A stretch of DNA of 61,441 nt, the filler included, from Dugesia japonica (taxonomy: Eukaryota): assembly GCA_001938525.1 (NCBI GenBank). It is 5 parts of 5 records of this genome, joined end to end, with 100 filler letters (N's around TTAATTAATTAA, not from the genome) between each part and the next. Parts side by side here need not be neighbours in the genome. Positions count along the whole stretch, not along the records: positions 1 to 12,008 come from MQRL01644164.1; 4 more parts are not named here. One strand, 5' to 3'. The stretch's first letter is position 1. Every line of letters starts with the position of its first letter. Made by a program: the position numbers and the translations under genes. The notes below the pieces were generated by a model. That model saw only the letters and a program-made list of their open reading frames with translations, had not been told where the DNA came from and did no database searches. This document shows, piece after piece, positions 1 through 12,008 of this stretch.

Positions 1-99
1 GGTGCACGCCATAAGCCTTTCTATTCGGGTTCACTATTTTCCCTTAACTATCAGTGAAAACTTAAATCCGTGATATTTGAAACATTTATTGCAATACAT

Positions 100-482
100 T
101 TACAATTCATCGAGCACGCTAGGGTCTAACCATTGGTCCGGATTGGTGGTCAAAAAGTTGAACGCTCCGATGTCGTTGTCGTCGTTCCATTGTATCCCAG
201 CTGGGTTACCCATCTGGTGAGATAGGTCGGCGATGTACTGCTTCAAGAACTCTACTTTTCTCAGAGGCAATTTCTTGATTTCTGCTTCCAGGATTTTTGT
301 TTGGAGTGCCAAGTCGTTTTGTTTTCGAACTACCAGATCTAACTTTTTTATGAGTTTGTCTCGCTGGGCAAGATGCCTGAGGAGAACCTGCTTGGTTTTA
401 CGTTTTAAGTGGTGTTCTAGCAATAGATGGCGCATGATACGGTAACATCTACGCAAACTAGTCGGGAACATGATTTGAGGCT
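100..482 (-). CDS. Copy A cassette exon 4 (basic, coiled-coil-like, unknown function)
   Basis: Acceptor tttcttttag|AG CCT CAA ATC ATG; open frame to TAA at 100; AATAAA at 85-90; clearly homologous to 9455-9837 and 56472-56860. Confidence 0.75.
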
Positions 483-603
483 CTAAAAGAAAATTATAGT
501 TAAGTCGGTGGGCAGCAAATTCACAATTCGGAGAAACAACACAAAAGAAAAATTATGTAAATAAATAATTTATTAAAGTCAGTCAACAATGCAACGTGAT
601 AAC

Positions 604-963
604 TCAGGAGCGGTTAGTCTGAATACATTTTTCGATCAAAAGAGGGGTCAAAGGGGTAGCGGCCCTCAGCTTCATTATATTTTTCAATAGTTGGTTCTCA
701 CGCTCCTGGTAAGATTTGATGATTTCAGTAAAAGTTTCGACCTGTAATTTCCAAATCCGCTCTTGGTTCTGGGTAGCGTCGATCTCAGATTTAAAAGACA
801 GACATTTTCTGCTTGTAACGTTTAACCTTAGCTTCCGCTGCCGCAGTCTCCGCTTCCCACCACCTTTTGGCGAGTCGATACAAATCCCACGTGAGTTCTA
901 TGTCCTCAATGGTTTCACGTAGCTTTTTGTTCGGGGCCTGAGACCTATTCAGTGAGGAATGCA
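604..963 (-). pseudogene. Copy A cassette exon 3 (one frameshift)
   Basis: Acceptor tattttag|TG CAT TCC; translates HSSLNRSQAPNKKLRETIEDIELTWDLYRLAK...QTNRS*; AATAAA at 569-574. Confidence 0.8.
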
Positions 964-1299
964 CTAAAATACAAACACAGTAATGTAGGGTAGAATTTTA
1001 GCAGATTTATAATTTACAAATGAGGACAATCTGGTCTACCACATACAAAATAGCAAGGGGTGGAGTTTCTAACTTTNNNNNNNNNNNNNNNNNNNNNNNN
1101 NNNNNNNNNNNNNNNNNNNNNNNNNNATCCCAGGTGATCTCGTTACACTGAGTTACCACTCTTACTAATCCTGAGAACTACCAAACCCACTATTATCATC
1201 AAGATAGCAGAAGTTTATCTTATCGAATGTATAAAGGTATCGTATAAAACAACAATAAAGAAGACACCTATTTATTCATAGTTCAAAAGGAAACATGAG

Positions 1300-1655
1300 T
1301 TATTCGTTTTCATTATTCGTGTCGACACTGGGTGCCGTGTTTTCCGCATCAGTTACCCCAGTAGGCTCCCTAACTCCCCAGAGGAGATTGGATATAAAAG
1401 CCTGCACGGCTGGAGCTGGAGTGGGGCGGAAATCTGATATTGGAAAGCTGTTACAAGGGTTCGGTCAGGGCCCGTCCAGGTTTGGTACCGCTGACGTTCT
1501 CCAAAATCGCTGATACGGGTGACAATAGATTCAATTGGAGGCAAGTTGGACCTGTCGATCAAGATGCCCGCGTTTTAATTGTGGGGGTTGTGATGACGTC
1601 GAAATATTATTCTACGGGTTCGTCGATCGATTACTCGTTCCCAGATGGATTCCAT
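1300..1655 (-). pseudogene. Copy A cassette exon 2 (stop plus frameshift)
   Basis: Acceptor ttcttag|CT ATG; MESIWERVIDRRTRRIIFRRHHNPHN*...ENTAP; AATAAA at 1271-1276. Confidence 0.8.
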
Positions 1656-1791
1656 AGCTAAGAAAAATAGAANAAGTGCTAAAATTCAAATAGAATAATT
1701 TTAAAATGAAAAACAATTTAAATTAACAATTGAGAAACAAAGCAAGCTTTTATACAATTTATTTTATCGTATGGGAATTGACCAGCTAAGG

Positions 1792-1974
1792 TTACTCTTT
1801 ATCTAAATCTACTCCATCGTTCGAAGGGAACATTTCGACTAGACAACAAAGATCTGTCTCATCCGGGTGTTCTATTTTTCCTCGGGTCAATAGATGAGCT
1901 ATTAATTGTTTCGTCCGAATAATTTGCCGTTGCTTTCTAATCCACCGTAGGGTTTGATATAATTCTGCGGGCAT
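1792..1974 (-). CDS. Copy A cassette exon 1
   Basis: Acceptor ttctttag|C ATG; MPAELYQTLRWI...HPDETDLCCLVEMFP...VDLD; AATAAA at 1758-1763. Confidence 0.7.
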   Translation of the reverse strand: MPAELYQTLRWIRKQRQIIRTKQLIAHLLTRGKIEHPDETDLCCLVEMFPSNDGVDLDKE

Positions 1975-3361
1975 GCTAAAGAATGAAGTCATTAATCACC
2001 ACTTTCGACTTATGACTTAGTTCCCTAAAAATGAAAAGTAACCACTGACCCTTAATATGACCATGTGTTGTACGTCATTAAAAGATAATACTTAAGGGAA
2101 TGATATTAGTTTGGATTAGAATGATTTGGGCAAGGAAATGACAGTTTGCCAAACATTATCGACAAACTAACCATAATAAGTAGCACCGCAACAGCGAGCA
2201 ACAGAACCCGAATCATATGGGAGTTAATAATATAACGGAGGAAAAATATTCTCCATGGTGCTCAAAAACTAGAGAATAATAATTCCGACATCAGGAACGG
2301 CACCCAGGCGGTAAATAGTAATCATAATCTTAAACTCTATTCAATTGTAATAAGAGGGAGATGTTACTCTGGTTAAATCACCAATACCAACACTGATGGT
2401 ATAATTATATGATGATTGTCGCAAAATTAGTCCTGCAATAAGGCCATTACTAATAGTAATAAAATGATGATTCTAGTATTAAGAAAATCATGAATTATGA
2501 TAATTATAATAATTATAAAAATCTTTCTTTTTTAAACCTCCGCGCTTCACCGTTGCATGGTGATTTTCTCCCCTTGACAACCAATTAGATCGATCTGCAA
2601 CATGTCGGTGTGTAAAGAATTAATCTCGTGTAGGTGTGCGAGAACGGAGTTGAACAACAACACCCAGCCATCATTATGAGCACACAGTCTAACGGTATGA
2701 CTTTCGGGTTGGTGCACATGCAAAGCCTACTGTCAGTTACAATTTTAGGTGATGATTCACTGTCTTTAAGCAAAAATTATGAAATGCGATAGTTATTTCT
2801 ATTCTGTGACAAAAATTCGTGGCCCTTCCATATCAGTAGAATCCAGCCGATCAGAGTCAGGGATCATCACATTAGTGGATGCTTATCATCAAAATCTGTG
2901 GATTTATTATCATTTCGAAATAACTGAATTAATGTATTATTTTGTTAAATAAATTGTTGGAATTTTATCCTTCTACAATCACAATCTTGGCCAAATAAAA
3001 AAAAANNTTGTTATAAAATGATGCACATAGAAAGGAAAACTAGGATGTATTCGACTTTTGGTTTATATTTTTACAACGCAGGTAAGTATAAATTTGTTCA
3101 GATCTCAATTAACCGGATCTTATGATATTTATTTATTAATATTTTCTTTAATTTAATGACCGTTAAAAGGAATTTACCGTAAAATGTCATTTAAGAGTCT
3201 ACTATCATTCAAAGTCAACAGTAGTCTATTTACTACAGATTAATACGTTTAATTGACTAAATAATGAATTGAAATTTTAATATACATATTTTATTAGAAA
3301 TAAATAACATCAAAAATTTTTTGACCATGCAATTCTTTACATAATAAAATAAATATTTTAC

Positions 3362-3910
3362 TTAATATCAATTGGCGAATTTCTGCAATGGGTTTGATTC
3401 AAGATTAAAGTGTTTCTTTCCGCTTTCGAGTGACGAATTTTCAAATAGATTTGAAGTGAATTCTTTGGATTGATTTCCTTGTACGTTGGAGTGCAAATTT
3501 CTTCGTTCGAAGTCAACTAGTATAATGTTATTCTTTTTCTTGATAATTTTCCGATTTCAAATATGTGGTTTGGAATNNNNNNNNNNNNNNNNNNNNNNNN
3601 NNNNNNNNNNNNNNNNNNNNNNNNNNTGTTATTCTTTTTCTTGATAATTTTCCGATTTCAAATATGTGGTTTGGAATTCACAATTTGTTATCAAATTTTT
3701 ATGTAGTACGTTTTATTGTTTTTTAGTCAGTTGTCTTGCTAAATTCAGGGGTCCTTTTATAGAATTTTCTGCACANCCCAACTTCCTCCAGATTCGTTAG
3801 TTATTTTTAGATCAACATTTTCTGATTTTATTGGTTCCAGTACCAGTTTTCTAAAAATTTTTGGAATTTTGGAGTTGCTATTGGCGTCTATTTTTGGACT
3901 GACACATGAT
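3362..3910 (-). promoter_or_regulatory. Copy A promoter and AUG-free leader exon
   Basis: TATAAAAG at 3754-3761, CTAAAAATAA at 3801-3810, CCAAT and CATGTG upstream; donor TTAA|GTAAAA at 3362/3361. Confidence 0.7.
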
Positions 3911-5306
3911 AATAGTGTCTATGTTTTATTTTTATTTTTAGATTTCTTATTGGTCCGATCTTGAGGACCCTGCAGTGACCCTCTGGAAGGTGGTAAGTGT
4001 TTCTTCTTATTAATCTCAACTGCATCTTGATATTTTCTTTCTGTATTTTCTTACCCCGATTCTTTCTGATTTCCTTGANNNNNNNNNNNNNNNNNNNNNN
4101 NNNNNNNNNNNNNNNNNNNNNNNTTTTTTATTTAAAATTAATTAATATTTTTCTTCTGTTAATTAATTATTTTCATACCGATTTTCTTGGTTTTCATTAT
4201 TATTTAATAATTCTTCTTAATTCCCAATATTGATATATGCTAGTTTTATTTACCTGGTTCTCTGTATTCCTCTTGGATTTTATTTCATTCTATTTTGCTG
4301 TTGATTTCATGCATTGCCTTTTATGTTTCAATATTGATAATGGCCTTGCCGTTCTTTTCCGTTGGTTCGGCTTTTCTGCCTTTTTCCTTTTTAACGGGTG
4401 TTCCACCCCAACAATTTTAAAGATTGACGATTTTTAACCACGTTATTTTTCCTTAGCATTAAATTCTCTATCTAATAGTTACTTTGATGTTTAAATTTGA
4501 TTTAAGTTTTTTATTTTCATTAATANNNNNNNNNNNNNNNNNNNNNNNNNNNNNNNNNNNNNNNNNNNNNNNNNNNNNNNNNNNNNNNNNNNNNNNNNNN
4601 NNNNNNNNNNNNNNNNNNNNNNNNNNNNNNNNNNNNNNNNNNNNNNNNNNNNNNNNNNNNNNNNNNNNNNNNNNNNNNNNNNNNNNNNNNNNNNNNNNNN
4701 NNNNNNTTTCCAATAATTGTTTAGAAATTATTTTAATGAATCAATGCTAAATAAAAATTTTCTATTAAAAATTAAACATTAATTAAAAAATACATACGAA
4801 ATTTAATTTGATTTAAAAATATTTCGTAATTTCATCAATAATTAATAAACATTTTCTATTATAATTTTAATTTAACCATAAAAAATTATAAATTTAATCA
4901 TAAAAATATATAATTGAAATCTAACTTACTTTCAAAACACAATTAAACATTTACTTACAAAAGTATAGTTTTAATCAAATTACACATTTAAATTAATCAA
5001 TTCATCATACTTAATTTATTCAATCAATTATATTAGATATTTTCAATAAATAATTACAAATTTGTTTTCAAAAATTATTAATACTTAATAAAAAATTCCC
5101 ATTTTAAATTAAATTTTAATTAAATTTTTACGATAAAAATAAAACACAAATTAAAATATACATGATCTAATTTAATTTTCAAAATTACAAATAGAAAATA
5201 TAGAACAGGATTTAATTAAATACTAATTAAATAGTAAATTTACCATTAGTGATTAGTAAAGACCTGCAACGTTTAGGAAAAACATTGATAACTAAAAATC
5301 AAAGTA

Positions 5307-5378
5307 AGCAGAGCACTGATAACAGAAATCTACTCGGCAAAGCACTGATAACAGAAATATACTCGGCAGAGCACTAGT
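5307..5378. repeat. ~29-bp tandem repeat, about 2.5 units
   Basis: GCAGAGCACTGATAACAGAAATCTACTCG repeated with few substitutions. Confidence 0.8.
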
Positions 5379-6011
5379 ACACAGAGCTTTGATAACTGAG
5401 GTCAGGTAAAGAGTAAAATTTCATTTAAATTCATCTAAGAAACTAACCAAAATTGACTAACCGAATAAATTATCATATTTTTATGTTCCTCGGGAACTCC
5501 TTAATTAAGTACTTGTTTTTCAATATAACTTTTATCTATAAGATTTGATGGTTTTAGGTTAATTTATTTGCAATCAGTGTAGAATTCTCTATCAAATAGA
5601 CAGGTTTTTAATTAAATTTGAGATACTTTNNNNNTTTTTAATTAATTATTGAGAAATAAAAACATTTAACTTTGTTCAAAGTAATTTGATTTGACAAATT
5701 TCTACCGTGTATATTTTTGATCAGTAAAAAATATTTAATAGTACTTGGATCATTAAATTTGGATGAAAATTATAAAAAATAAATTTTTACTTGTGTCGAT
5801 TAAGCGTAATTCGGATTTTTGACTACGTTTTTACGAATTTTCTTTGTAAAAAATAAGTTTGATGATTTTAGGAGATGTTGTTCGTGATCAGTAAAAAATT
5901 TGGGTAATCAAAAAACCAAAGCTCTAACATCATTCGGAGAACTTCGGCAGAGATTCGAAGCTTGAGCCAAAGACGAACCTGAAATTATAATTAAAACAAA
6001 GACACAATCGT

Positions 6012-6535
6012 CATGTGTCACTCTAAAAATAACAACCAATTACGGCACCAAAACTCGAAGAAAAGTTTAGAGAATTGGCACCGGAACCAAAATCGAAAAG
6101 CCACTCTAAAAATAACTGACAAATCTGAAAGAAGTTGGGGTGTGAAAGAAATCCTATAAAAGAACCCCTGATTTTAGCAAAAAAATATATACAAAACCAA
6201 CTACAAATTTTGCATATTCACATACGAAAAAACTCTGTGAAAACTTATTTGTGGACTTTACAAATCAACGGATTGTCAAGGAAATTAACTGTTACAATAC
6301 TAATATTCGGAAGAAACTTATTAATTGGTTAACGCGCATCAATCGTATCGAAACCTATCTGTGAATTAGAGTAAATTAAATTTCTATTTGCGTTGCGGAT
6401 AATTTTCTTTCTTTTAAGAAAAAGGAAAATAAAGGAATACCTGATCCAGGAATCAAATCCGGAAATTGCCAACTCAATACTAATTATTTACAAAAGAAAA
6501 CCCGTTGCAGAGATCCTTTAGTTTAACAGCACGAA
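6012..6535 (+). promoter_or_regulatory. Copy B promoter and AUG-free leader exon
   Basis: CATGTG 6012, CTAAAAATAA 6023 and 6106, CCAAT 6036, TATAAAAG 6155-6162; no ATG in 6181-6535; donor CGAA|GTAAAA at 6535/6536. Confidence 0.75.
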
Positions 6536-7429
6536 GTAAAATATTATTTTGATTATGTTAAAATGATATTATATGAAAAGTGGAAATATTATTTATTGTA
6601 ATAAATTCATATATGCAAAGAATCTTAGGTTATTAATTTTTCCCCGTAAATATATTAATTACGGTTGATAAGTGATTGACAAAGTTTGAATGAAAAATAA
6701 ATCTTTAAATAAAAATGTTTTAGACCTATTCGTTATTAAATGCAAAAAAAGGAAAAAATGGAAATAATTCCTCATCCCTCATTAAATTGAATAAGTTATT
6801 AACCAATAAAAATAACATAACTAAGCTATACTCTATTTGAATAAAATTACAAATATCAGTGCCTAAAATGAAAGTTGAATCAGTTTATTTTTTGTTGTGC
6901 CAATAAATTTAGGGAACAGCCAGACCAAAATGTTCATCTGCATTGCTATGATTTAAAGAAGGAACAACACTGTAATTACCACCGTTTATTTAGCAAAAAT
7001 AATAACTTACCTCCATTAGTTTAAAACGTAAATAATCCTAGAAATGTCCGTAATGAAAAAATCAATGAATATGCCTAACATTTTTTTGTATCAGCTAAAT
7101 TCAACCGGCAGCGAATTTGATACTCTAACCCAGTGATTAACTATCTAGTTCCGTAAATTTTCCAAAAACACCGAGCTATATCATTTAAATCGCGAGCTGC
7201 AGTTAGCAGGTTGATCTAAATTCATATTATTAGGTGGTGTGTATAGTCGCTGAAAATTAAAAAACATAGCATGGATTTAATGCTTGATGCTCAGTTTGGT
7301 TTCTAGCCAAACACACCTACAACAGGATGATATGCCCACACACCAGCCTAATAAAATTCGTCATAGTATATTCCTAAGCAACACAATGCGCATGAAATCA
7401 AATTACATAAATTCAGAAAGAAATTAATT

Positions 7430-7960
7430 TTTATTATAATTAATATGATTGTTATTTTTATTAATTTTATTACTATCAATACTAAGACTATTAATATTAC
7501 CGATATTATCCTTATGGTTGGGAGTACTAATTTTATGGTTATGGTTGACGAAATTAACAGTATTAATACTACTTTAATTGCCGGTAAACTTAGAATTAAT
7601 TCAACTATTATTTTTACTATCTTTAACAGTACTATCATTAGTATGAACATCGCTCTGATTACTGTTAAAATCATTATCAATATGGTTGTTATGAACATTA
7701 CTATTGGCCATATGGGTAGTTTCATCGTTGAAATTATGATCAGTAATATTATTACCATTATCATTAACATGCTCAAGGTGATGTTTATTCCGGGTAGGAT
7801 CAAAAATACTACGTTTAGCCCTACTATCTTTATGATGAGCGTTATAAATGTTATTAAGATTCTAATATTGACCAATGGGTCTNAATTAAAATTATTCAGT
7901 AAACTAGTATCGTGGTAGTGGAACGAGTCCTCCTATTAATAATAGTCGGCAATAGTAATG
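7430..7960. repeat. Degenerate ATT/AAT-periodic low-complexity block inside the element
   Basis: 3-nt periodicity gives Ile-rich ORFs on both strands; similar blocks at about 2040-2520, 58390-58860 and 60654-60850. Confidence 0.7.
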
Positions 7961-8026
7961 AAATTTTTTTTTGTAGGAGTTTGAACCACGAGTTATGATT
8001 TAACATTTGTTCTCTTTATTTAGTTC

Positions 8027-8221
8027 ATGACACCCGAATTGCGTCGTACTCTCCAATGGATAAAACGACGATGTCAAACTGCTCGATTAAGACAGTTTAT
8101 CGCCCATCTATTAACTAAGCGAAGAATTGAACACCGGGATGAGACAGATCTTTGCTGTTTCGCGGAGATGTTCCCCTCAGTGACTCCAGTAGATTTAGAT
8201 GCGGAGAGTACGCCTTTCTAA
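8027..8221 (+). CDS. Copy B cassette exon 1 (64 aa)
   Basis: Acceptor tatttag|TTC ATG; AATAAA 8260-8265; homologous to 1792-1974 and 60898-61092. Confidence 0.75.
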   Translation: MTPELRRTLQWIKRRCQTARLRQFIAHLLTKRRIEHRDETDLCCFAEMFPSVTPVDLDAESTPF

Positions 8222-8370
8222 GCAGGAGTGTAATCTGCGAATTACTGTTAATTGTCTAAAATAAACTGATGATTTGATTAAATCTATTTGTTGTTTATTT
8301 CTGTTACCTTTAATTAATTTAAAATGAAATTATATATTATAATTTAAACAAAATTTCGGTTATTTATAGA

Positions 8371-8724
8371 ATGGAATCTATATGGGAAATGGTAGTGGAT
8401 AGAAGAACTCGTCGAATAATCTTCCGAGGACATCACAACCCCCACAATCGGGACGCGGGAATTTTGGCCGACAGATCTAATTTGCCTCCTGTAGAGTCCA
8501 TCGTCGAGCCCATAAGAGACTTTGATGAGCGTCAGCGGTACCAAGCCTGGACAGGCCCTCATCGCACCCTTGCGACATCCTTTCATTATCAGCCTTCCAC
8601 TCTAATTCCAGCTCCCGCTGTACAGGCCTTTATCACTAACCTACTCTAGGGAATAAGAGAACCCTCGGGTAGCGAAGACTCGGAAAATACCGCACCCGTG
8701 CCGGATTTACCAACTCCTCCTTAG
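8371..8724 (+). pseudogene. Copy B cassette exon 2 (Arg-rich N-terminus; TGG>TAG at 8647)
   Basis: Acceptor tttatag|A ATG; homology to A and D continues past the internal TAG (GIREPSGSEDSENTAP); AATAAA 8746-8751. Confidence 0.8.
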
Positions 8725-8969
8725 TGATTTATATGTGTGACGTATAATAAAATAATCTGGTTGTCCTGGTCTAAAATATATGTTCGATGTTTTGTATAAT
8801 TCTTAAGAGATTTTTCGTTTGTTTCTCATTTTCAGATTGTTTTCTAGGTTTTCAAGTCGATTTGGGTGATCTAGAACTTGGTAATCAGATTTGTAACTAC
8901 TGTGTCTGTGAAGAAACATAAAGTTATGAGAGCTATTTTCGATAATATGTATATGTTTTTTCTTTCTAG

Positions 8970-9328
8970 TGCATTCCTCGTTCAACCGTCCTTCAGCCCC
9001 TACTAAGAAAATCCGAGATACCAGTGAGGACCTCGAATTCACTTGGAATTTATATCGGTTAGCCAAACGCCGATGGGAAACTGAAGTAGCCGCGGCCAAC
9101 AGTAAGCTCCTACGCTATAAGAAAAAATGCGTCCTCTTTAAAAAAAAAGCAGAAGCCTCCCATTCCCAGGATCGCATTTGGAAAAGACAAGTAGGGTCTT
9201 TCTCGGAGATGATCCGGTCCAGCCATGACCGAGAAAATAAACTGGTTAGCGATATTTTACTTCTCCAGGAGAAAATCCCTCTCGAGCCGTTGATGATAGA
9301 GAGGGGCACTCAGACCCCTCGAAGCTAG
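8970..9328 (+). CDS. Copy B cassette exon 3 (coiled-coil-like, frame intact)
   Basis: Acceptor tttctag|TG CAT TCC; the ORF-track GTG start borrows the G of the AG; AATAAA 9355-9360. Confidence 0.8.
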
Positions 9329-9454
9329 TCATATAGCAATATTGTTTCTTTGTTAATAAACTTATTGTTAAACTTTTGGCTTCCGTTATTGTCTTAATGT
9401 TCTCTTGAGTTTTGTGGTCGAACGCTTGTATATTTAACTTATTTTATTTTTCAG

Positions 9455-9837
9455 TGCCTCACATCCACTTTCCCAATAACCTCCGTAGGTGTCACCGCGT
9501 CATGCACCGCCTGTTGGTTGAACGACACTTAAAACAAAACACCGATAAATCATTGATTAAATACCTGAATCAAAAAGATCGATTAATTAAAAAGTTGGAC
9601 CAAATCGTGAGAAAACAAAATGACCTTGTGGTGCCAATAAAAGCTTTATAAGAAGAAAATAAACTATTGTTACAGCGGAAAATCGATTTCCTCAAGCAGT
9701 ATATATCTGACTTGTCCCGACAGCTAGGAGACACTACCTGGGCCCAATGGGACGATAATGACGATGTCGCTGCTTTTAGTGTCTTGGGAACGGATCCGGC
9801 TCGGTGGTTAGACCCCGGAGCTTTGGATCTAATGTAA
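9455..9837 (+). pseudogene. Copy B cassette exon 4 (internal TAA at 9649)
   Basis: Acceptor tttttcag|TG CCT CAC; homology continues to WLDPGALDLM*; AATAAA 9847-9852. Confidence 0.8.
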
Positions 9838-9909
9838 ATGTAATGAAATAAAAAATGTATAGTCCACGTTGTAGTTCCTCAAATATGTTTGTAATAACAG
9901 GGAAAGTAA

Positions 9910-10082
9910 TGAACCCGAATACAAAGGTTTGTGGGTGCGCACCTCCCATTAAGCAAGGGGTCAACCACCACAAACTGAAAATCTGCCTTGGGGCGGTAGA
10001 TCAAATTCTTAAAAGGGTTCCCCTGAGGGCTGTTTTTCCCTAGCCACCTTTTTCTTCGTTCAATTCAGGTGGGACCCCAACA
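9910..10082 (+). other. Conserved structured terminal block of the element (U5-like)
   Basis: Conserved in B, D, E and partly A; several helices with compensatory changes. Confidence 0.65.
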
Positions 10083-10299
10083 GATGTAAAAAACTCGACA
10101 AAAAATTTTTCAAAAATTTTTGAAATTTCAGATGTTTTCCCGGATTCGCATAAAAATTTGATTTGAAAATTTTAAAAATCTGAAAATTTAAACAAGAATG
10201 ATCTAATTTCACCAATTTACCACAAAAGTTTAAAATAATTTAAAAAACTTGAAAATTTAAACACATTCTACTTTTTCCATGAATTTCCGTAAAAATTCA

Positions 10300-10690
10300 T
10301 CCCAAACTGACCAACCCCGAGGAAATAATTCACCAATAACGACCAAAAATTAGCTAAACTGACCAGTTCCGAGGAAAATTTCAGTCAAATCGCTCAAAAA
10401 TGAACCAAATTAACCATTCTCGAGTTAAATAATTGATCAAACGCACAAAGATTACCTAAAACCGACCAAGTTTGCCCAAATTGTCCACTCACGAGGAAAT
10501 AATTGACCAAATCATCCAAAAGTGAACCAAATTAACCATTCCCGAGGAAATATTCGACTAAATTCCCCTGAACTAACCAAAATTTGACCTTATTCGAACT
10601 CATTGAGGAAACTTTGGACAAAAACCACCTAAAATTACCAATCCCGAGGAAATATTCGGCCAATTTCACCTTAACCAATTAAAACTTGAT
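10300..10690. repeat. Degenerate ~55-bp tandem array (ACCA..CCCGAGGAAA..TTGACCAAA core)
   Basis: CGAGGAAA-like core recurs about 7 times at roughly regular spacing. Confidence 0.7.
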
Positions 10691-11319
10691 TGATTAAAAA
10701 GCCTATAAGATTTTCCCAACTAAATACACAGGAAAAATTAAACGCCAGTTAATCCAATTACGTAAAATTTCACCGATAAAATTAATCTCATGACATAATT
10801 TGTGTGCAAAAAATTTTCCTAACTAAATACACANGGAAACAGTAACACTAAATTAAGTAATATTACCTAATGATACAATTTATGATGTAATTTTTAAATT
10901 CCCAACTATATGCAATAGGATTAAATTTCATTACGTCATGGCGGGGGGGCTTCGCACACATGTGGTGTTAATTCCCATTATCCCTCTACTTGGAGAAAAT
11001 AATTAAAATAATTATGCGCATATTTGTTTGAATATTAAAGCTTTTCAAAGTAAATTTTTTCAATTCTGACAAACATTGTTCCAAATAAATGATTGGTAAT
11101 GAGGATGTTTTTCTGGTTAATAGACAAGAAAGCTATTATTAAACTACTTCATTGTCTTCTAGGTTTGACTCACACAAAAAATAGAATAGCTTATAAAAGA
11201 CTGGATTGATCTCACCTTCAACTAAGCAGTTATATAATGGCGCTATCACATCTGAAAACTGGCAGTTCGTTCACAGAGCCAAATCAAGTAACCTTCCAGT
11301 AGGGAGCAATTATTGAATG

Positions 11320-12008
11320 TCTTTCAGCTGTTTTACGTTTCAAGTGCCTCTCTATTAACAGTCGGCGCATTATTCGGTGGCATCGTCTTAGGCTATTGGG
11401 AAAATTAATATGTGGCACTAAAATAAATAGGACAGTAATGACATTCATATCTTGCTTAGGACATTAAATAAAGGTAAAAGTAAAAAAATAATTGGACGAA
11501 TATAAACACTAAGAAAGTGATTTTATTAAACCGAGTTTTAACAGATTTTATGGACGAGAACTTTGGACACCTTTGTCTACCATAAGCGGTGTCAGTGGCA
11601 TAGTTTTTTTTATTCAGAATGTCGCCCACCAGTTTATTCTTTCGGTCTTGGTAGGACCAGATAAGCTCGGTAAGTGATTCTAATTGGACTTTCCAGACTC
11701 TTTCTTGACGATGCGATGCTTCGGCTTCTGCTTTGAAAGCCAAGCACTTCTTTTTATAGCGCCGAACTTTGGCACCAGCAGATGCAACATCAGCTTCCCA
11801 ACGATGCTTAGCCAATTTATAGAGATCCCAAGTGATTTCGGTTTCATCACTGGAATCTCTCATTTTCTAAGTAGGTGCTACCGCTCGGTTTAATGACGAA
11901 TGCACTGAAATACAGAAAATTAAACCACAGTTAAACAGAAATTAAATGGACACAAAAAATCTCAAGATTTCTATACTGTGATAATACCACGAGGTTTATC
12001 CACTATAT
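11320..12008 (-). mobile_element. Element copy C (fragment: exon 3 and start of exon 4)
   Basis: tttcag|TG CAT TCG at 11904; ttttag|TG CCA CAT at 11417 (PHINFPNSLRRCHRIMRRLLIERHLKRK); AATAAA 11522-11527. Confidence 0.8.

What the first reader, a model, noticed from the sequence alone, without database searches (positions are those of the whole stretch)
5950..10082. Giant LTR-like element with a one-promoter, four-alternative-terminal-exon gene cassette
Seen: diverged copies A, B, D (plus fragments C, F) share the order TATA promoter, leader, donor, then four short ORFs of about 60-130 aa. Each ORF is directly preceded by a pyrimidine tract plus AG and followed within about 45 nt by AATAAA. 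Spacers are barely alignable while the ORFs stay conserved with many synonymous changes (e.g. RRTRR coded CGA CGA ACC CGT AGA in A and AGA AGA ACT CGT CGA in B). Each ORF ends in its own stop, so these are not exons of one protein. Inference: a common leader is spliced to one of four terminal exons, each separately polyadenylated. This resembles the adenovirus major late unit or complex-retrovirus accessory gene expression, but packed inside a repeat unit. I recognise none of the four proteins.
Basis: partly seen in the sequence, partly recalled or inferred. Interest (0 to 1): 0.95.

Follow-up and report, generated by a model that had tools for sequence, protein, structure and literature searches.

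The report
One leader, four alternative last exons
A 4-kb unit, present three times in this window, appears to make four unrelated small proteins from one promoter by splicing one non-coding leader to any of four last exons, but no RNA data were available to confirm this.

Summary
Three diverged copies lie in alternating orientation: A on the minus strand (4-3962), B on the plus strand (5958-9938), D on the minus strand (11310-12008, cut by the edge).

They share this order:
- a TATA promoter block, 81% identical and the best-kept part;
- a leader of about 350 nt without a single ATG;
- a conserved donor;
- four short reading frames.

Similarity between copies begins at the AG before each frame. 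All ten acceptors have pyrimidine tracts and AG-free zones. Each frame has its own stop, followed by AATAAA at matching places in the copies. dN/dS is about 0.1-0.2 in the named frame only.

New point: ORF1 and ORF2 carry their own ATG. The ORF3 and ORF4 exons start with TG, one base into a codon, and the leader ends in A. Splicing would therefore assemble their start codon.

The expression model is supported in silico. "LTR-like" is not: there are no flanking direct repeats and no transposon or viral domains.

The logic has cellular precedents in C. elegans unc-60 and the unc-17/cha-1 locus. All four proteins are orphans in every search. Every copy carries at least one break. A trans-spliced operon remains the main rival.

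The parts
5958..6100 (+). Copy B: upstream conserved block
   Evidence: 68% identical to A 3820-3962. It contains an internal repeat of the motif CACTCTAAAAATAAC about 85 nt apart.
6101..6185 (+). Copy B: core promoter block with the TATA box CTATAAAAG at 6154-6162
   Evidence: 81% identical to copy A, the best-conserved stretch of the whole unit.
6186..6535 (+). Copy B: non-coding leader exon. The start is inferred as about 25-30 nt after the TATA box. The last base, 6535, is an A.
   Evidence: No ATG from the TATA box to the donor, where 5.9 are expected (shuffle P 0.0024). The body is only 42% identical to A, while the last 65 nt around the donor are 66% identical.
6536..8023 (+). Copy B: intron from the leader donor (GTAAAATATT) to the first acceptor. 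It contains a decayed (ATT)n tract at about 7440-7880.
   Evidence: The donor motif is conserved in A. The interior does not align with A. The tract shows 3-base periodicity.
8024..8265 (+). Copy B, cassette 1: acceptor AG at 8022-8023, ORF1 at 8027-8221 (64 aa, intact), AATAAA at 8260-8265
   Evidence: (dN/dS 0.19). The AATAAA sits in the same aligned column in A.
8370..8751 (+). Copy B, cassette 2: acceptor AG at 8368-8369, ORF2 at 8371-8649 (92 aa, intact), AATAAA at 8746-8751
   Evidence: (79% amino-acid identity to A, dN/dS 0.11).
8970..9360 (+). Copy B, cassette 3: acceptor AG at 8968-8969. The exon starts with TG one base into a codon. ORF3 runs to the stop at 9326-9328 (119 codons counting the split ATG, intact). 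AATAAA at 9355-9360.
   Evidence: The stop is in the same aligned column in A, B and D, as three different stop codons.
9455..9852 (+). Copy B, cassette 4: acceptor AG at 9453-9454. The exon starts with TG one base into a codon. ORF4 runs to the stop at 9835-9837 (127 codons counting the split ATG, broken by one in-frame stop). AATAAA at 9847-9852.
9899..9934 (+). Copy B: conserved 36-nt block downstream of the last poly(A) signal
   Evidence: 86% complementary to A 9-44. It occurs only at these two places in the window. Copy A ends at the piece's edge here, so the true 3' limit of the unit is unknown.
3677..3962 (-). Copy A: upstream block and core promoter, with the TATA box at 3754-3762
3362..3730 (-). 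Copy A: leader exon. It holds a 50-N assembly gap, and its last base, 3362, is an A.
   Evidence: No ATG where 4.2 are expected (P 0.009). The donor AA|GTAAAATATT is conserved.
1758..1975 (-). Copy A, cassette 1: ORF1 from the ATG at 1974 to the stop at 1792 (intact), AATAAA at 1758-1763
1271..1657 (-). Copy A, cassette 2: ORF2 from the ATG at 1655, broken by 1 in-frame stop and 1 frameshift. AATAAA at 1271-1276.
569..963 (-). Copy A, cassette 3: ORF3, whose exon starts with TG, broken by 1 frameshift. Stop at 604-606, AATAAA at 569-574.
85..482 (-). Copy A, cassette 4: ORF4. The frame is open to the stop at 100-102, but the two bases after the acceptor are AG instead of TG. An in-frame ATG lies at 471. 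AATAAA at 85-90.
11548..11904 (-). Copy D, cassette 3: ORF3, whose exon starts with TG, broken by 1 in-frame stop and 1 frameshift. AATAAA at 11522-11527, just beyond.
11329..11417 (-). Copy D, cassette 4: the first 29 or so codons of ORF4 (exon starts with TG). Similarity then ends, so the copy is truncated at its 3' end.

Best explanation
This is an RNA polymerase II transcription unit of about 4 kb, repeated at least three times here in alternating orientation.

Proposed layout and working:
- A TATA promoter drives a leader exon of about 350 nt that contains no ATG.
- The leader's single donor is joined to one of four downstream acceptors.
- Each acceptor opens a single-exon cassette made of a short reading frame, a stop, AATAAA and a GT-rich downstream stretch. 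The acceptor and poly(A) site used together decide which of four unrelated small proteins (64, 92, 119 and 127 codons) is made.
- ORF1 and ORF2 start at an ATG 1-3 nt inside their exon.
- ORF3 and ORF4 have no ATG. Their exons begin with TG one base into a codon, and the leader ends in A, so the start codon exists only after splicing.

The proteins are basic and predicted helical, with no signal peptide or membrane segment. They are probably intracellular partners that are made together. That last point is inference only.

Shown by sequence comparison: the coding frames and purifying selection, the exon edges, the conserved stops and poly(A) signals, the ATG-free leader, and the A|TG geometry.

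Inferred: that the leader really is spliced in cis to all four acceptors, where transcription starts, and what the proteins do.

The three copies look like an old, locally duplicated family. Each carries one to three breaks. Some of these could be sequencing errors, given the poor state of the assembly.
For: - Three copies with the same order of parts.
- Coding frames under purifying selection only in the named frame: dN/dS 0.1-0.2, against about 1 or more in shifted frames.
- Identity steps up at each AG.
- 10 of 10 acceptors have a pyrimidine tract, an AG-free zone of at least 21 nt and a branch-point-like motif.
- The spacing from AG to ATG differs between A and B for ORF1 and ORF2, so no reading frame crosses those acceptors.
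- The ORF3 stop is in the same column in three copies, as TAG, TGA and TAA.
- AATAAA sits at matching places after every stop in A and B.
- The core promoter is the best-conserved block, at 81%.
- The leader is free of ATG in both copies (P 0.0024 and 0.009).
- 5 of 6 ORF3/ORF4 acceptors read AG|TGC, with the frame one base into a codon. Selection acts on the codons directly after the acceptor. The leader ends in A in both copies.
- The gaps between a poly(A) signal and the next acceptor are 93-217 nt. That is too short to hold a promoter, a first exon and an intron.
- No conserved extra exon lies in the long intron.
- Precedent for this logic: unc-60 and unc-17/cha-1 (PMC3875643).
Against: - There is no transcript evidence of any kind. 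The source organism is unknown and no eukaryotic genome or RNA data set could be searched.
- Three poly(A) sites, and seven more AATAAA in the long intron, would have to be passed over to reach the last cassette.
- The contexts of the split ATGs are not strong Kozak contexts.
- In copy A the TG after the ORF4 acceptor is not kept.
- Every copy has at least one broken frame, so these particular copies may not all be expressed or functional.
- The gaps of about 95-105 nt between a poly(A) signal and the next acceptor fit a trans-spliced operon equally well.
- Only two copies show the leader, and only three copies exist in all, so the statistics rest on few independent observations.
Confidence: 0.6

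Rival explanations
1. It is a trans-spliced operon. One long precursor RNA is cut at each poly(A) site. ORF2, ORF3 and ORF4 each receive a short spliced leader from a separate SL RNA, as in nematodes, flatworms and tunicates. The cis leader serves ORF1 only.
For: - Each downstream frame is preceded by a strong acceptor with no nearby donor.
- The distance from AATAAA to the next acceptor is 103, 217 and 93 nt. Operon-like spacing of about 100 nt is established knowledge for C. elegans.
- The start codon lies at or within 3 nt of the acceptor.
- Spliced leaders can donate a start codon, as the flatworm SL that ends in AUG does (PMC9851317).
Against: - ORF3 and ORF4 need exactly one base, an A, from the upstream exon. 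An SL ending in AUG would put them in the wrong frame, which runs into stops.
- Every SL I can recall ends in G (memory only, not checked).
- The cis leader supplies the required A in both copies and is ATG-free over its whole length. That fits a leader used for translation of all the cassettes.
- No SL RNA or other Rfam family was found in the window.
- unc-60 shows the same spacing of about 90 nt although it is cis-spliced.
Confidence: 0.2
2. It is an ordinary gene of five exons encoding one protein. The four frames would be coding exons whose frames happen to run on to a stop inside the following intron.
For: Conservation starts at acceptor-like AGs. In AT-rich introns a stop soon after a donor is expected.
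Against: - The AG-to-ATG spacing differs between A and B for ORF1 (3 against 1 nt) and ORF2 (1 against 2 nt), so no frame is kept across those acceptors.
- No GT in a matching phase is shared by the copies at the ends of ORF1 or ORF2 (reading).
- The ORF3 and ORF4 stops are conserved in position and are followed by conserved AATAAA.
Confidence: 0.03
3. It is a mobile or virus-derived element, as the reader's 'LTR-like' suggests. The repeat unit would be a selfish element, and the four proteins would serve its spread.
For: - It is multi-copy.
- The copies diverged under purifying selection yet each carries breaks, the pattern seen in families of mobile elements.
- The proteins are orphans.
- Its layout is compact and virus-like.
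Against: - No terminal direct or inverted repeats.
- No reverse transcriptase, integrase, transposase, Rep or capsid signal in Pfam or PHROGs.
- No relatives in 2.9 million viral contigs.
- The three copies sit side by side in alternating orientation, which fits local inverted duplication.
- The 3' limit cannot be seen because copy A runs off the piece.
Confidence: 0.12
4. They are four separate small genes, each with its own promoter in the spacer in front of it.
For: The spacers are AT-rich and would contain TATA-like strings by chance.
Against: - Each frame starts directly at a conserved acceptor, so each needs an upstream donor.
- The gaps of 93-217 nt cannot hold a promoter, an exon, a donor and an intron, and they are not conserved (0.37-0.51 identity).
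- ORF3 and ORF4 lack an ATG.
Confidence: 0.05

Closest known systems
C. elegans unc-60 (ADF/cofilin) locus
   Same: - A common first exon is joined either to a proximal or to a distal set of exons, each set with its own poly(A) site.
[quoted passage not shown]
- The proximal poly(A) site lies about 90 nt before the distal acceptor (PMC3875643). Here the gaps are 93-217 nt, and the first exon supplies only one base of the start codon for ORF3 and ORF4.
   Different: - unc-60 has two alternatives, each of four exons, and the two proteins are paralogues (38% identical).
- Here there are four single-exon alternatives with no detectable similarity to each other.
- Two of them carry their own ATG.
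- The whole unit is multi-copy.
- There is no sequence similarity to ADF/cofilin.
Cholinergic gene locus (unc-17/VAChT and cha-1/ChAT)
   Same: Two unrelated proteins are made from one promoter through a shared 5' untranslated exon. [quoted passage not shown]
   Different: That locus makes two large proteins of known function and is single-copy and conserved across animals. Here there are four tiny orphan proteins in a repeated unit.
Adenovirus major late transcription unit
   Same: The logic alone: one promoter, a non-coding leader spliced to alternative acceptors, and several poly(A) sites along one precursor RNA (established knowledge, not tested here).
   Different: - The viral leader is tripartite. 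Here a single leader exon is predicted.
- No protein here matches any viral family or viral contig.
- The unit is 4 kb, each mRNA class would carry one frame, and there are no viral hallmark genes.
Nematode-type SL2 trans-spliced operon
   Same: A string of cistrons, each with an acceptor about 100 nt after the previous poly(A) signal.
   Different: A conserved cis leader and donor are present. ORF3 and ORF4 need an A from the upstream exon. No SL is known for this source. See the rival explanations.

Membership tests
LTR retrotransposon / solo LTR | Two long direct terminal repeats flanking the element | tested here: not met
   No direct repeat longer than 71 nt in the window. The large similarities are all between inverted copies of the whole unit.
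LTR retrotransposon / solo LTR | gag/pol domains (protease, reverse transcriptase, RNase H, integrase) | tested here: not met
   Pfam finds nothing above threshold in the four frames or in the other long frames of the window.
Complex-retrovirus accessory-gene expression | All spliced mRNAs share one 3' end in the 3' LTR | tested here: not met
   Each frame has its own conserved stop and AATAAA.
Adenovirus major late unit (as a relative) | Homology of the encoded proteins to adenoviral late proteins | tested here: not met
   No Pfam, PDB-sequence, PHROGs or viral-contig match.
unc-60 / cholinergic-locus type of alternative processing (a way of working, not a homology family) | One promoter and one shared first exon that is non-coding or holds only the start codon | tested here: met
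   Conserved TATA block, ATG-free leader and conserved donor. The leader ends in A and ORF3/ORF4 exons start with TG. This is sequence evidence only.
unc-60 / cholinergic-locus type of alternative processing (a way of working, not a homology family) | Alternative downstream exon sets, each ending in its own poly(A) site | tested here: met
   Four acceptor-frame-stop-AATAAA cassettes conserved in the copies.
unc-60 / cholinergic-locus type of alternative processing (a way of working, not a homology family) | Transcripts that join the shared exon to each alternative | not testable with these tools
   No RNA data and no eukaryotic genome collection were available.
SL trans-spliced operon | Downstream cistrons with an acceptor about 100 nt after the previous poly(A) signal | tested here: inconclusive
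   The gaps are 103, 217 and 93 nt. The spacing fits, but it fits unc-60-type cis processing too.
SL trans-spliced operon | A spliced leader RNA whose addition leaves each cistron translatable | tested here: inconclusive
   ORF3 and ORF4 need an upstream exon ending in A. No SL RNA family was found in the window, and the organism's SL, if it has one, is unknown.
Single multi-exon protein-coding gene | One reading frame kept across every exon junction in all copies | tested here: not met
   The AG-to-ATG spacing differs between copies for ORF1 and ORF2. The stops of ORF3 and ORF4 are conserved in position.

The most novel reading that the evidence does not exclude
The unit is a so far undescribed selfish or virus-derived element. 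It would carry no recognisable replication or integration gene, and it would express four orphan proteins through a miniature 'major-late-like' programme in which two start codons are written by splicing.
Probability: 0.12. Interest if true: 0.85.

Novelty: new variant of a known kind. Interest (0 to 1): 0.6.

Why it matters
If transcripts confirm it, this would be an unusually clear case of several things:
- One eukaryotic promoter serving four unrelated proteins through a choice among terminal exons. The known cellular cases, unc-60 and the cholinergic locus, have two.
- Start codons that exist only in correctly spliced mRNA.
- Four protein families with no relatives among billions of predicted proteins, yet kept under purifying selection.

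It also bears on gene annotation. Standard gene finders expect one protein per locus and an ATG in the genome, so they would miss ORF3 and ORF4 altogether. That may be why nothing similar is on record.

Tried and rejected
Homology searches, all blank:
- Word-indexed protein search with ORF1, ORF2 and ORF3.
- Exhaustive phmmer of the copy-A ORF4 against 1.84 billion representative proteins, with 0 hits.
- Pfam, PHROGs and PDB sequences.
- Two metagenome scans with alignments of ORF2 and ORF3.
- Three viral-contig scans.
- Exact-product look-ups.
- Full-text search for four peptide words.

Structure: AlphaFold2 gave pLDDT 46 for ORF2 and 60 for ORF1. That is too low for a fold search to mean anything, so none was run.

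Other tests:
- The four frames show no similarity to each other.
- No further fragments of the unit lie elsewhere in the piece.
- No Rfam family and no tRNA were found.
- The GC-richer tail at 9895-10090 has no unusual fold (z = 0.22).
- Reading the frames on the opposite strand was rejected: tblastx scores are lower and there is no third-position bias.
- An ORF1-to-ORF3 or ORF1-to-ORF4 fusion through a donor near the end of ORF1 works in phase in copy B but not in copy A. It is left as unsupported.

- I also recalled from memory the 3' ends of several published spliced leaders.

The contig does not look human, and no outside sequence was fetched: every search of the collections came back empty.

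Full report
LAYOUT OF THE WINDOW

The piece (1-12008) is AT-rich. GC is 25-42%, falling to 8% around a sized gap. It is a rough assembly, with single Ns, runs of 45-181 N, and a 51-nt exact duplicate on both sides of one 50-N gap.

Self-comparison shows three diverged copies of one unit:
- A lies on the minus strand at 4-3962.
- B lies on the plus strand at 5958-9938. This is the finding.
- D lies on the minus strand at 11310-12008 and is cut by the piece's edge.

A and B are head-to-head across about 1.9 kb of very AT-rich, internally repetitive DNA. B and D are tail-to-tail across about 1.4 kb that holds a degenerate array of 51-nt repeats. DNA identity between copies is 59-70%.

THE FOUR FRAMES ARE REAL CODING SEQUENCES

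tblastx scores are highest on the B plus strand, in four blocks. Mismatches concentrate at third codon positions in the named frame. NG86 gives pN 0.12-0.35 against pS 0.61-1.0, so dN/dS is about 0.1-0.2 where dS is not saturated. The two shifted frames give ratios of about 1 or more.

THE FRAMES ARE SEPARATE TERMINAL EXONS, NOT EXONS OF ONE PROTEIN

- Identity between copies jumps at the AG before each frame, from 0.35-0.51 in the 40 nt before to 0.60-0.75 after.
- All ten visible acceptors have a pyrimidine tract (0.55-0.80 against a background of 0.49), an AG-free zone of at least 21 nt, and a TTAAC/TTAAT/TTACT-like motif at branch-point distance.
- For ORF1 and ORF2 the ATG lies 1-3 nt after the AG, and that spacing differs between A and B. 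No frame is therefore kept across the acceptor, and the ATG is the start.
- The ORF3 stop falls in the same aligned column in A, B and D, as three different stop codons. The ORF4 stop and the AATAAA 10 nt after it are also aligned in A and B.
- Sense-strand AATAAA follows the stops at +39, +97, +27 and +10 nt in B, and at matching distances in A.
- AATAAA is frequent here, with 15 on the sense strand of B. The argument therefore rests on conserved position inside otherwise unalignable spacers, not on presence alone.
- GT-rich stretches follow each signal (reading).
- The gaps from a signal to the next acceptor are 103, 217 and 93 nt. That is too short for a promoter plus a first exon plus an intron.

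PROMOTER AND LEADER

- The best-conserved stretch of the whole unit is an 85-nt block with the TATA box CTATAAAAG (81% identity).
- The next 350 nt or so are poorly conserved (42%).
- Conservation rises again at the end of the leader, around the donor AA|GTAAAATATT (B 6535|6536, A 3362|3361).
- From the TATA box to the donor there is no ATG in either copy, where 5.9 and 4.2 are expected (shuffle P 0.0024 and 0.009). This is what one expects of a 5' untranslated exon that must hand scanning ribosomes to the first ATG after the junction.

A NEW POINT: START CODONS WRITTEN BY SPLICING

- ORF3 and ORF4 have no conserved ATG.
- Five of their six acceptors are followed by TGC.
- The selected frame begins one base before that TG.
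- Purifying selection acts on the codons directly after the acceptor.
- The upstream exon must therefore supply one base. Only an A gives a start codon.
- The leader ends in A in both copies where it can be seen.
- Joining 6535 to 8970 or to 9455 would therefore write ATG across the junction.
- No conserved extra exon that could supply an ATG is present in the 1.4-1.5 kb intron.

STATE OF THE COPIES (counts only)

| Copy | ORF1 | ORF2 | ORF3 | ORF4 |
|---|---|---|---|---|
| A | intact | 1 stop and 1 frameshift | 1 frameshift | open, but without the TG after the acceptor |
| B | intact | intact | intact | 1 stop |
| D | outside the piece | outside the piece | 1 stop and 1 frameshift | truncated at the 3' end |

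Selection shaped most of the divergence and the assembly is rough. The breaks may therefore be recent decay, or in part sequencing errors.

WHAT THE PROTEINS ARE

Unknown. Every search came back empty. That includes an exhaustive phmmer of ORF4 against 1.84 billion representative proteins.

The four frames are not paralogues of each other. They are small and mostly basic, with pI 8.4-10.1 in B, and have no hydrophobic N-terminus. ORF1 is predicted as one long and one short helix at low confidence (pLDDT 60), and ORF2 at pLDDT 46. No fold search was justified.

MECHANISM PROPOSED

One TATA promoter drives an ATG-free leader. The leader's donor is joined to one of four acceptors, and cleavage at that cassette's poly(A) site completes the mRNA.

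Use of a distal cassette requires that the proximal acceptors and poly(A) sites be skipped. This is what happens in C. elegans unc-60. There the common exon holds only the initiation codon, and the proximal poly(A) site lies about 90 nt before the distal acceptor. The unc-17/cha-1 locus likewise shares a 5' untranslated exon (PMC3875643).

Confidence is about 0.6, because no RNA evidence could be consulted.

RIVALS

- Trans-spliced operon (0.2). It fits the spacing and the acceptors but needs a spliced leader ending in A. A flatworm-type leader ending in AUG (PMC9851317) would give the wrong frame.
- Mobile or virus-derived element (0.12). It is not excluded, but there are no terminal repeats and no hallmark domains, no relatives in viral contigs, and the copies sit side by side.
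- Four genes with their own promoters (0.05) and one multi-exon gene (0.03). The sequence contradicts both.

VERDICT

The "giant LTR-like element" label and the retrovirus analogy are not supported. The logic is a new variant of a known kind of locus rather than something without precedent.

SLIPS

Noticed in passing
window 7440-7880: A stretch of about 440 nt inside the long intron of copy B is open in reading frames on both strands (157 and 175 aa in the ORF list). It is a decayed trinucleotide repeat: on the plus strand A is 71% at position 1 and T is 56-57% at positions 2 and 3, i.e. (ATT)n, or (AAT)n = poly-Asn on the minus strand. The open frames are a by-product of composition.
   Followed up: yes
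window 10300-10700: A degenerate array of units about 51 nt long (5 or more copies, 63-83% identical, core CCCGAGGAAATA) lies in the spacer between the tails of copies B and D. Tandem Repeats Finder did not report it.
   Followed up: partly
window 3526-3677: An exact 51-nt duplicate lies on both sides of a 50-N gap (3526-3576 = 3627-3677). It is most likely an unmerged overlap, i.e. an assembly artefact, and it sits inside the leader of copy A.
   Followed up: no
window 3990-5930: The spacer between the heads of A and B is extremely AT-rich (GC down to 8% around a 181-N gap). It is made of mutually similar direct and inverted blocks of about 100-350 nt, plus a 29-nt tandem repeat at 5308-5375. 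Part of it (5047-5228) resembles 10087-10273 beyond the tail of B at 62%.
   Followed up: partly
window 6018-6033 and 6103-6118: The motif CACTCTAAAAATAAC occurs twice, about 85 nt apart, upstream of the TATA box of copy B, and again in copy A. It is a possible repeated regulatory site.
   Followed up: no
window 8650-8706 and 1323-1378: DNA similarity between A and B continues for about 55 nt beyond the ORF2 stop of B. The ancestral ORF2 may therefore have been somewhat longer at its C-terminus.
   Followed up: partly
window 9899-9934 and 9-44: A 36-nt block about 50 nt after the last poly(A) signal is 86% conserved between B and A and occurs nowhere else in the window. Its role is unknown: it could be a downstream poly(A) element or the end of the unit. 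Copy A then runs off the piece.
   Followed up: partly
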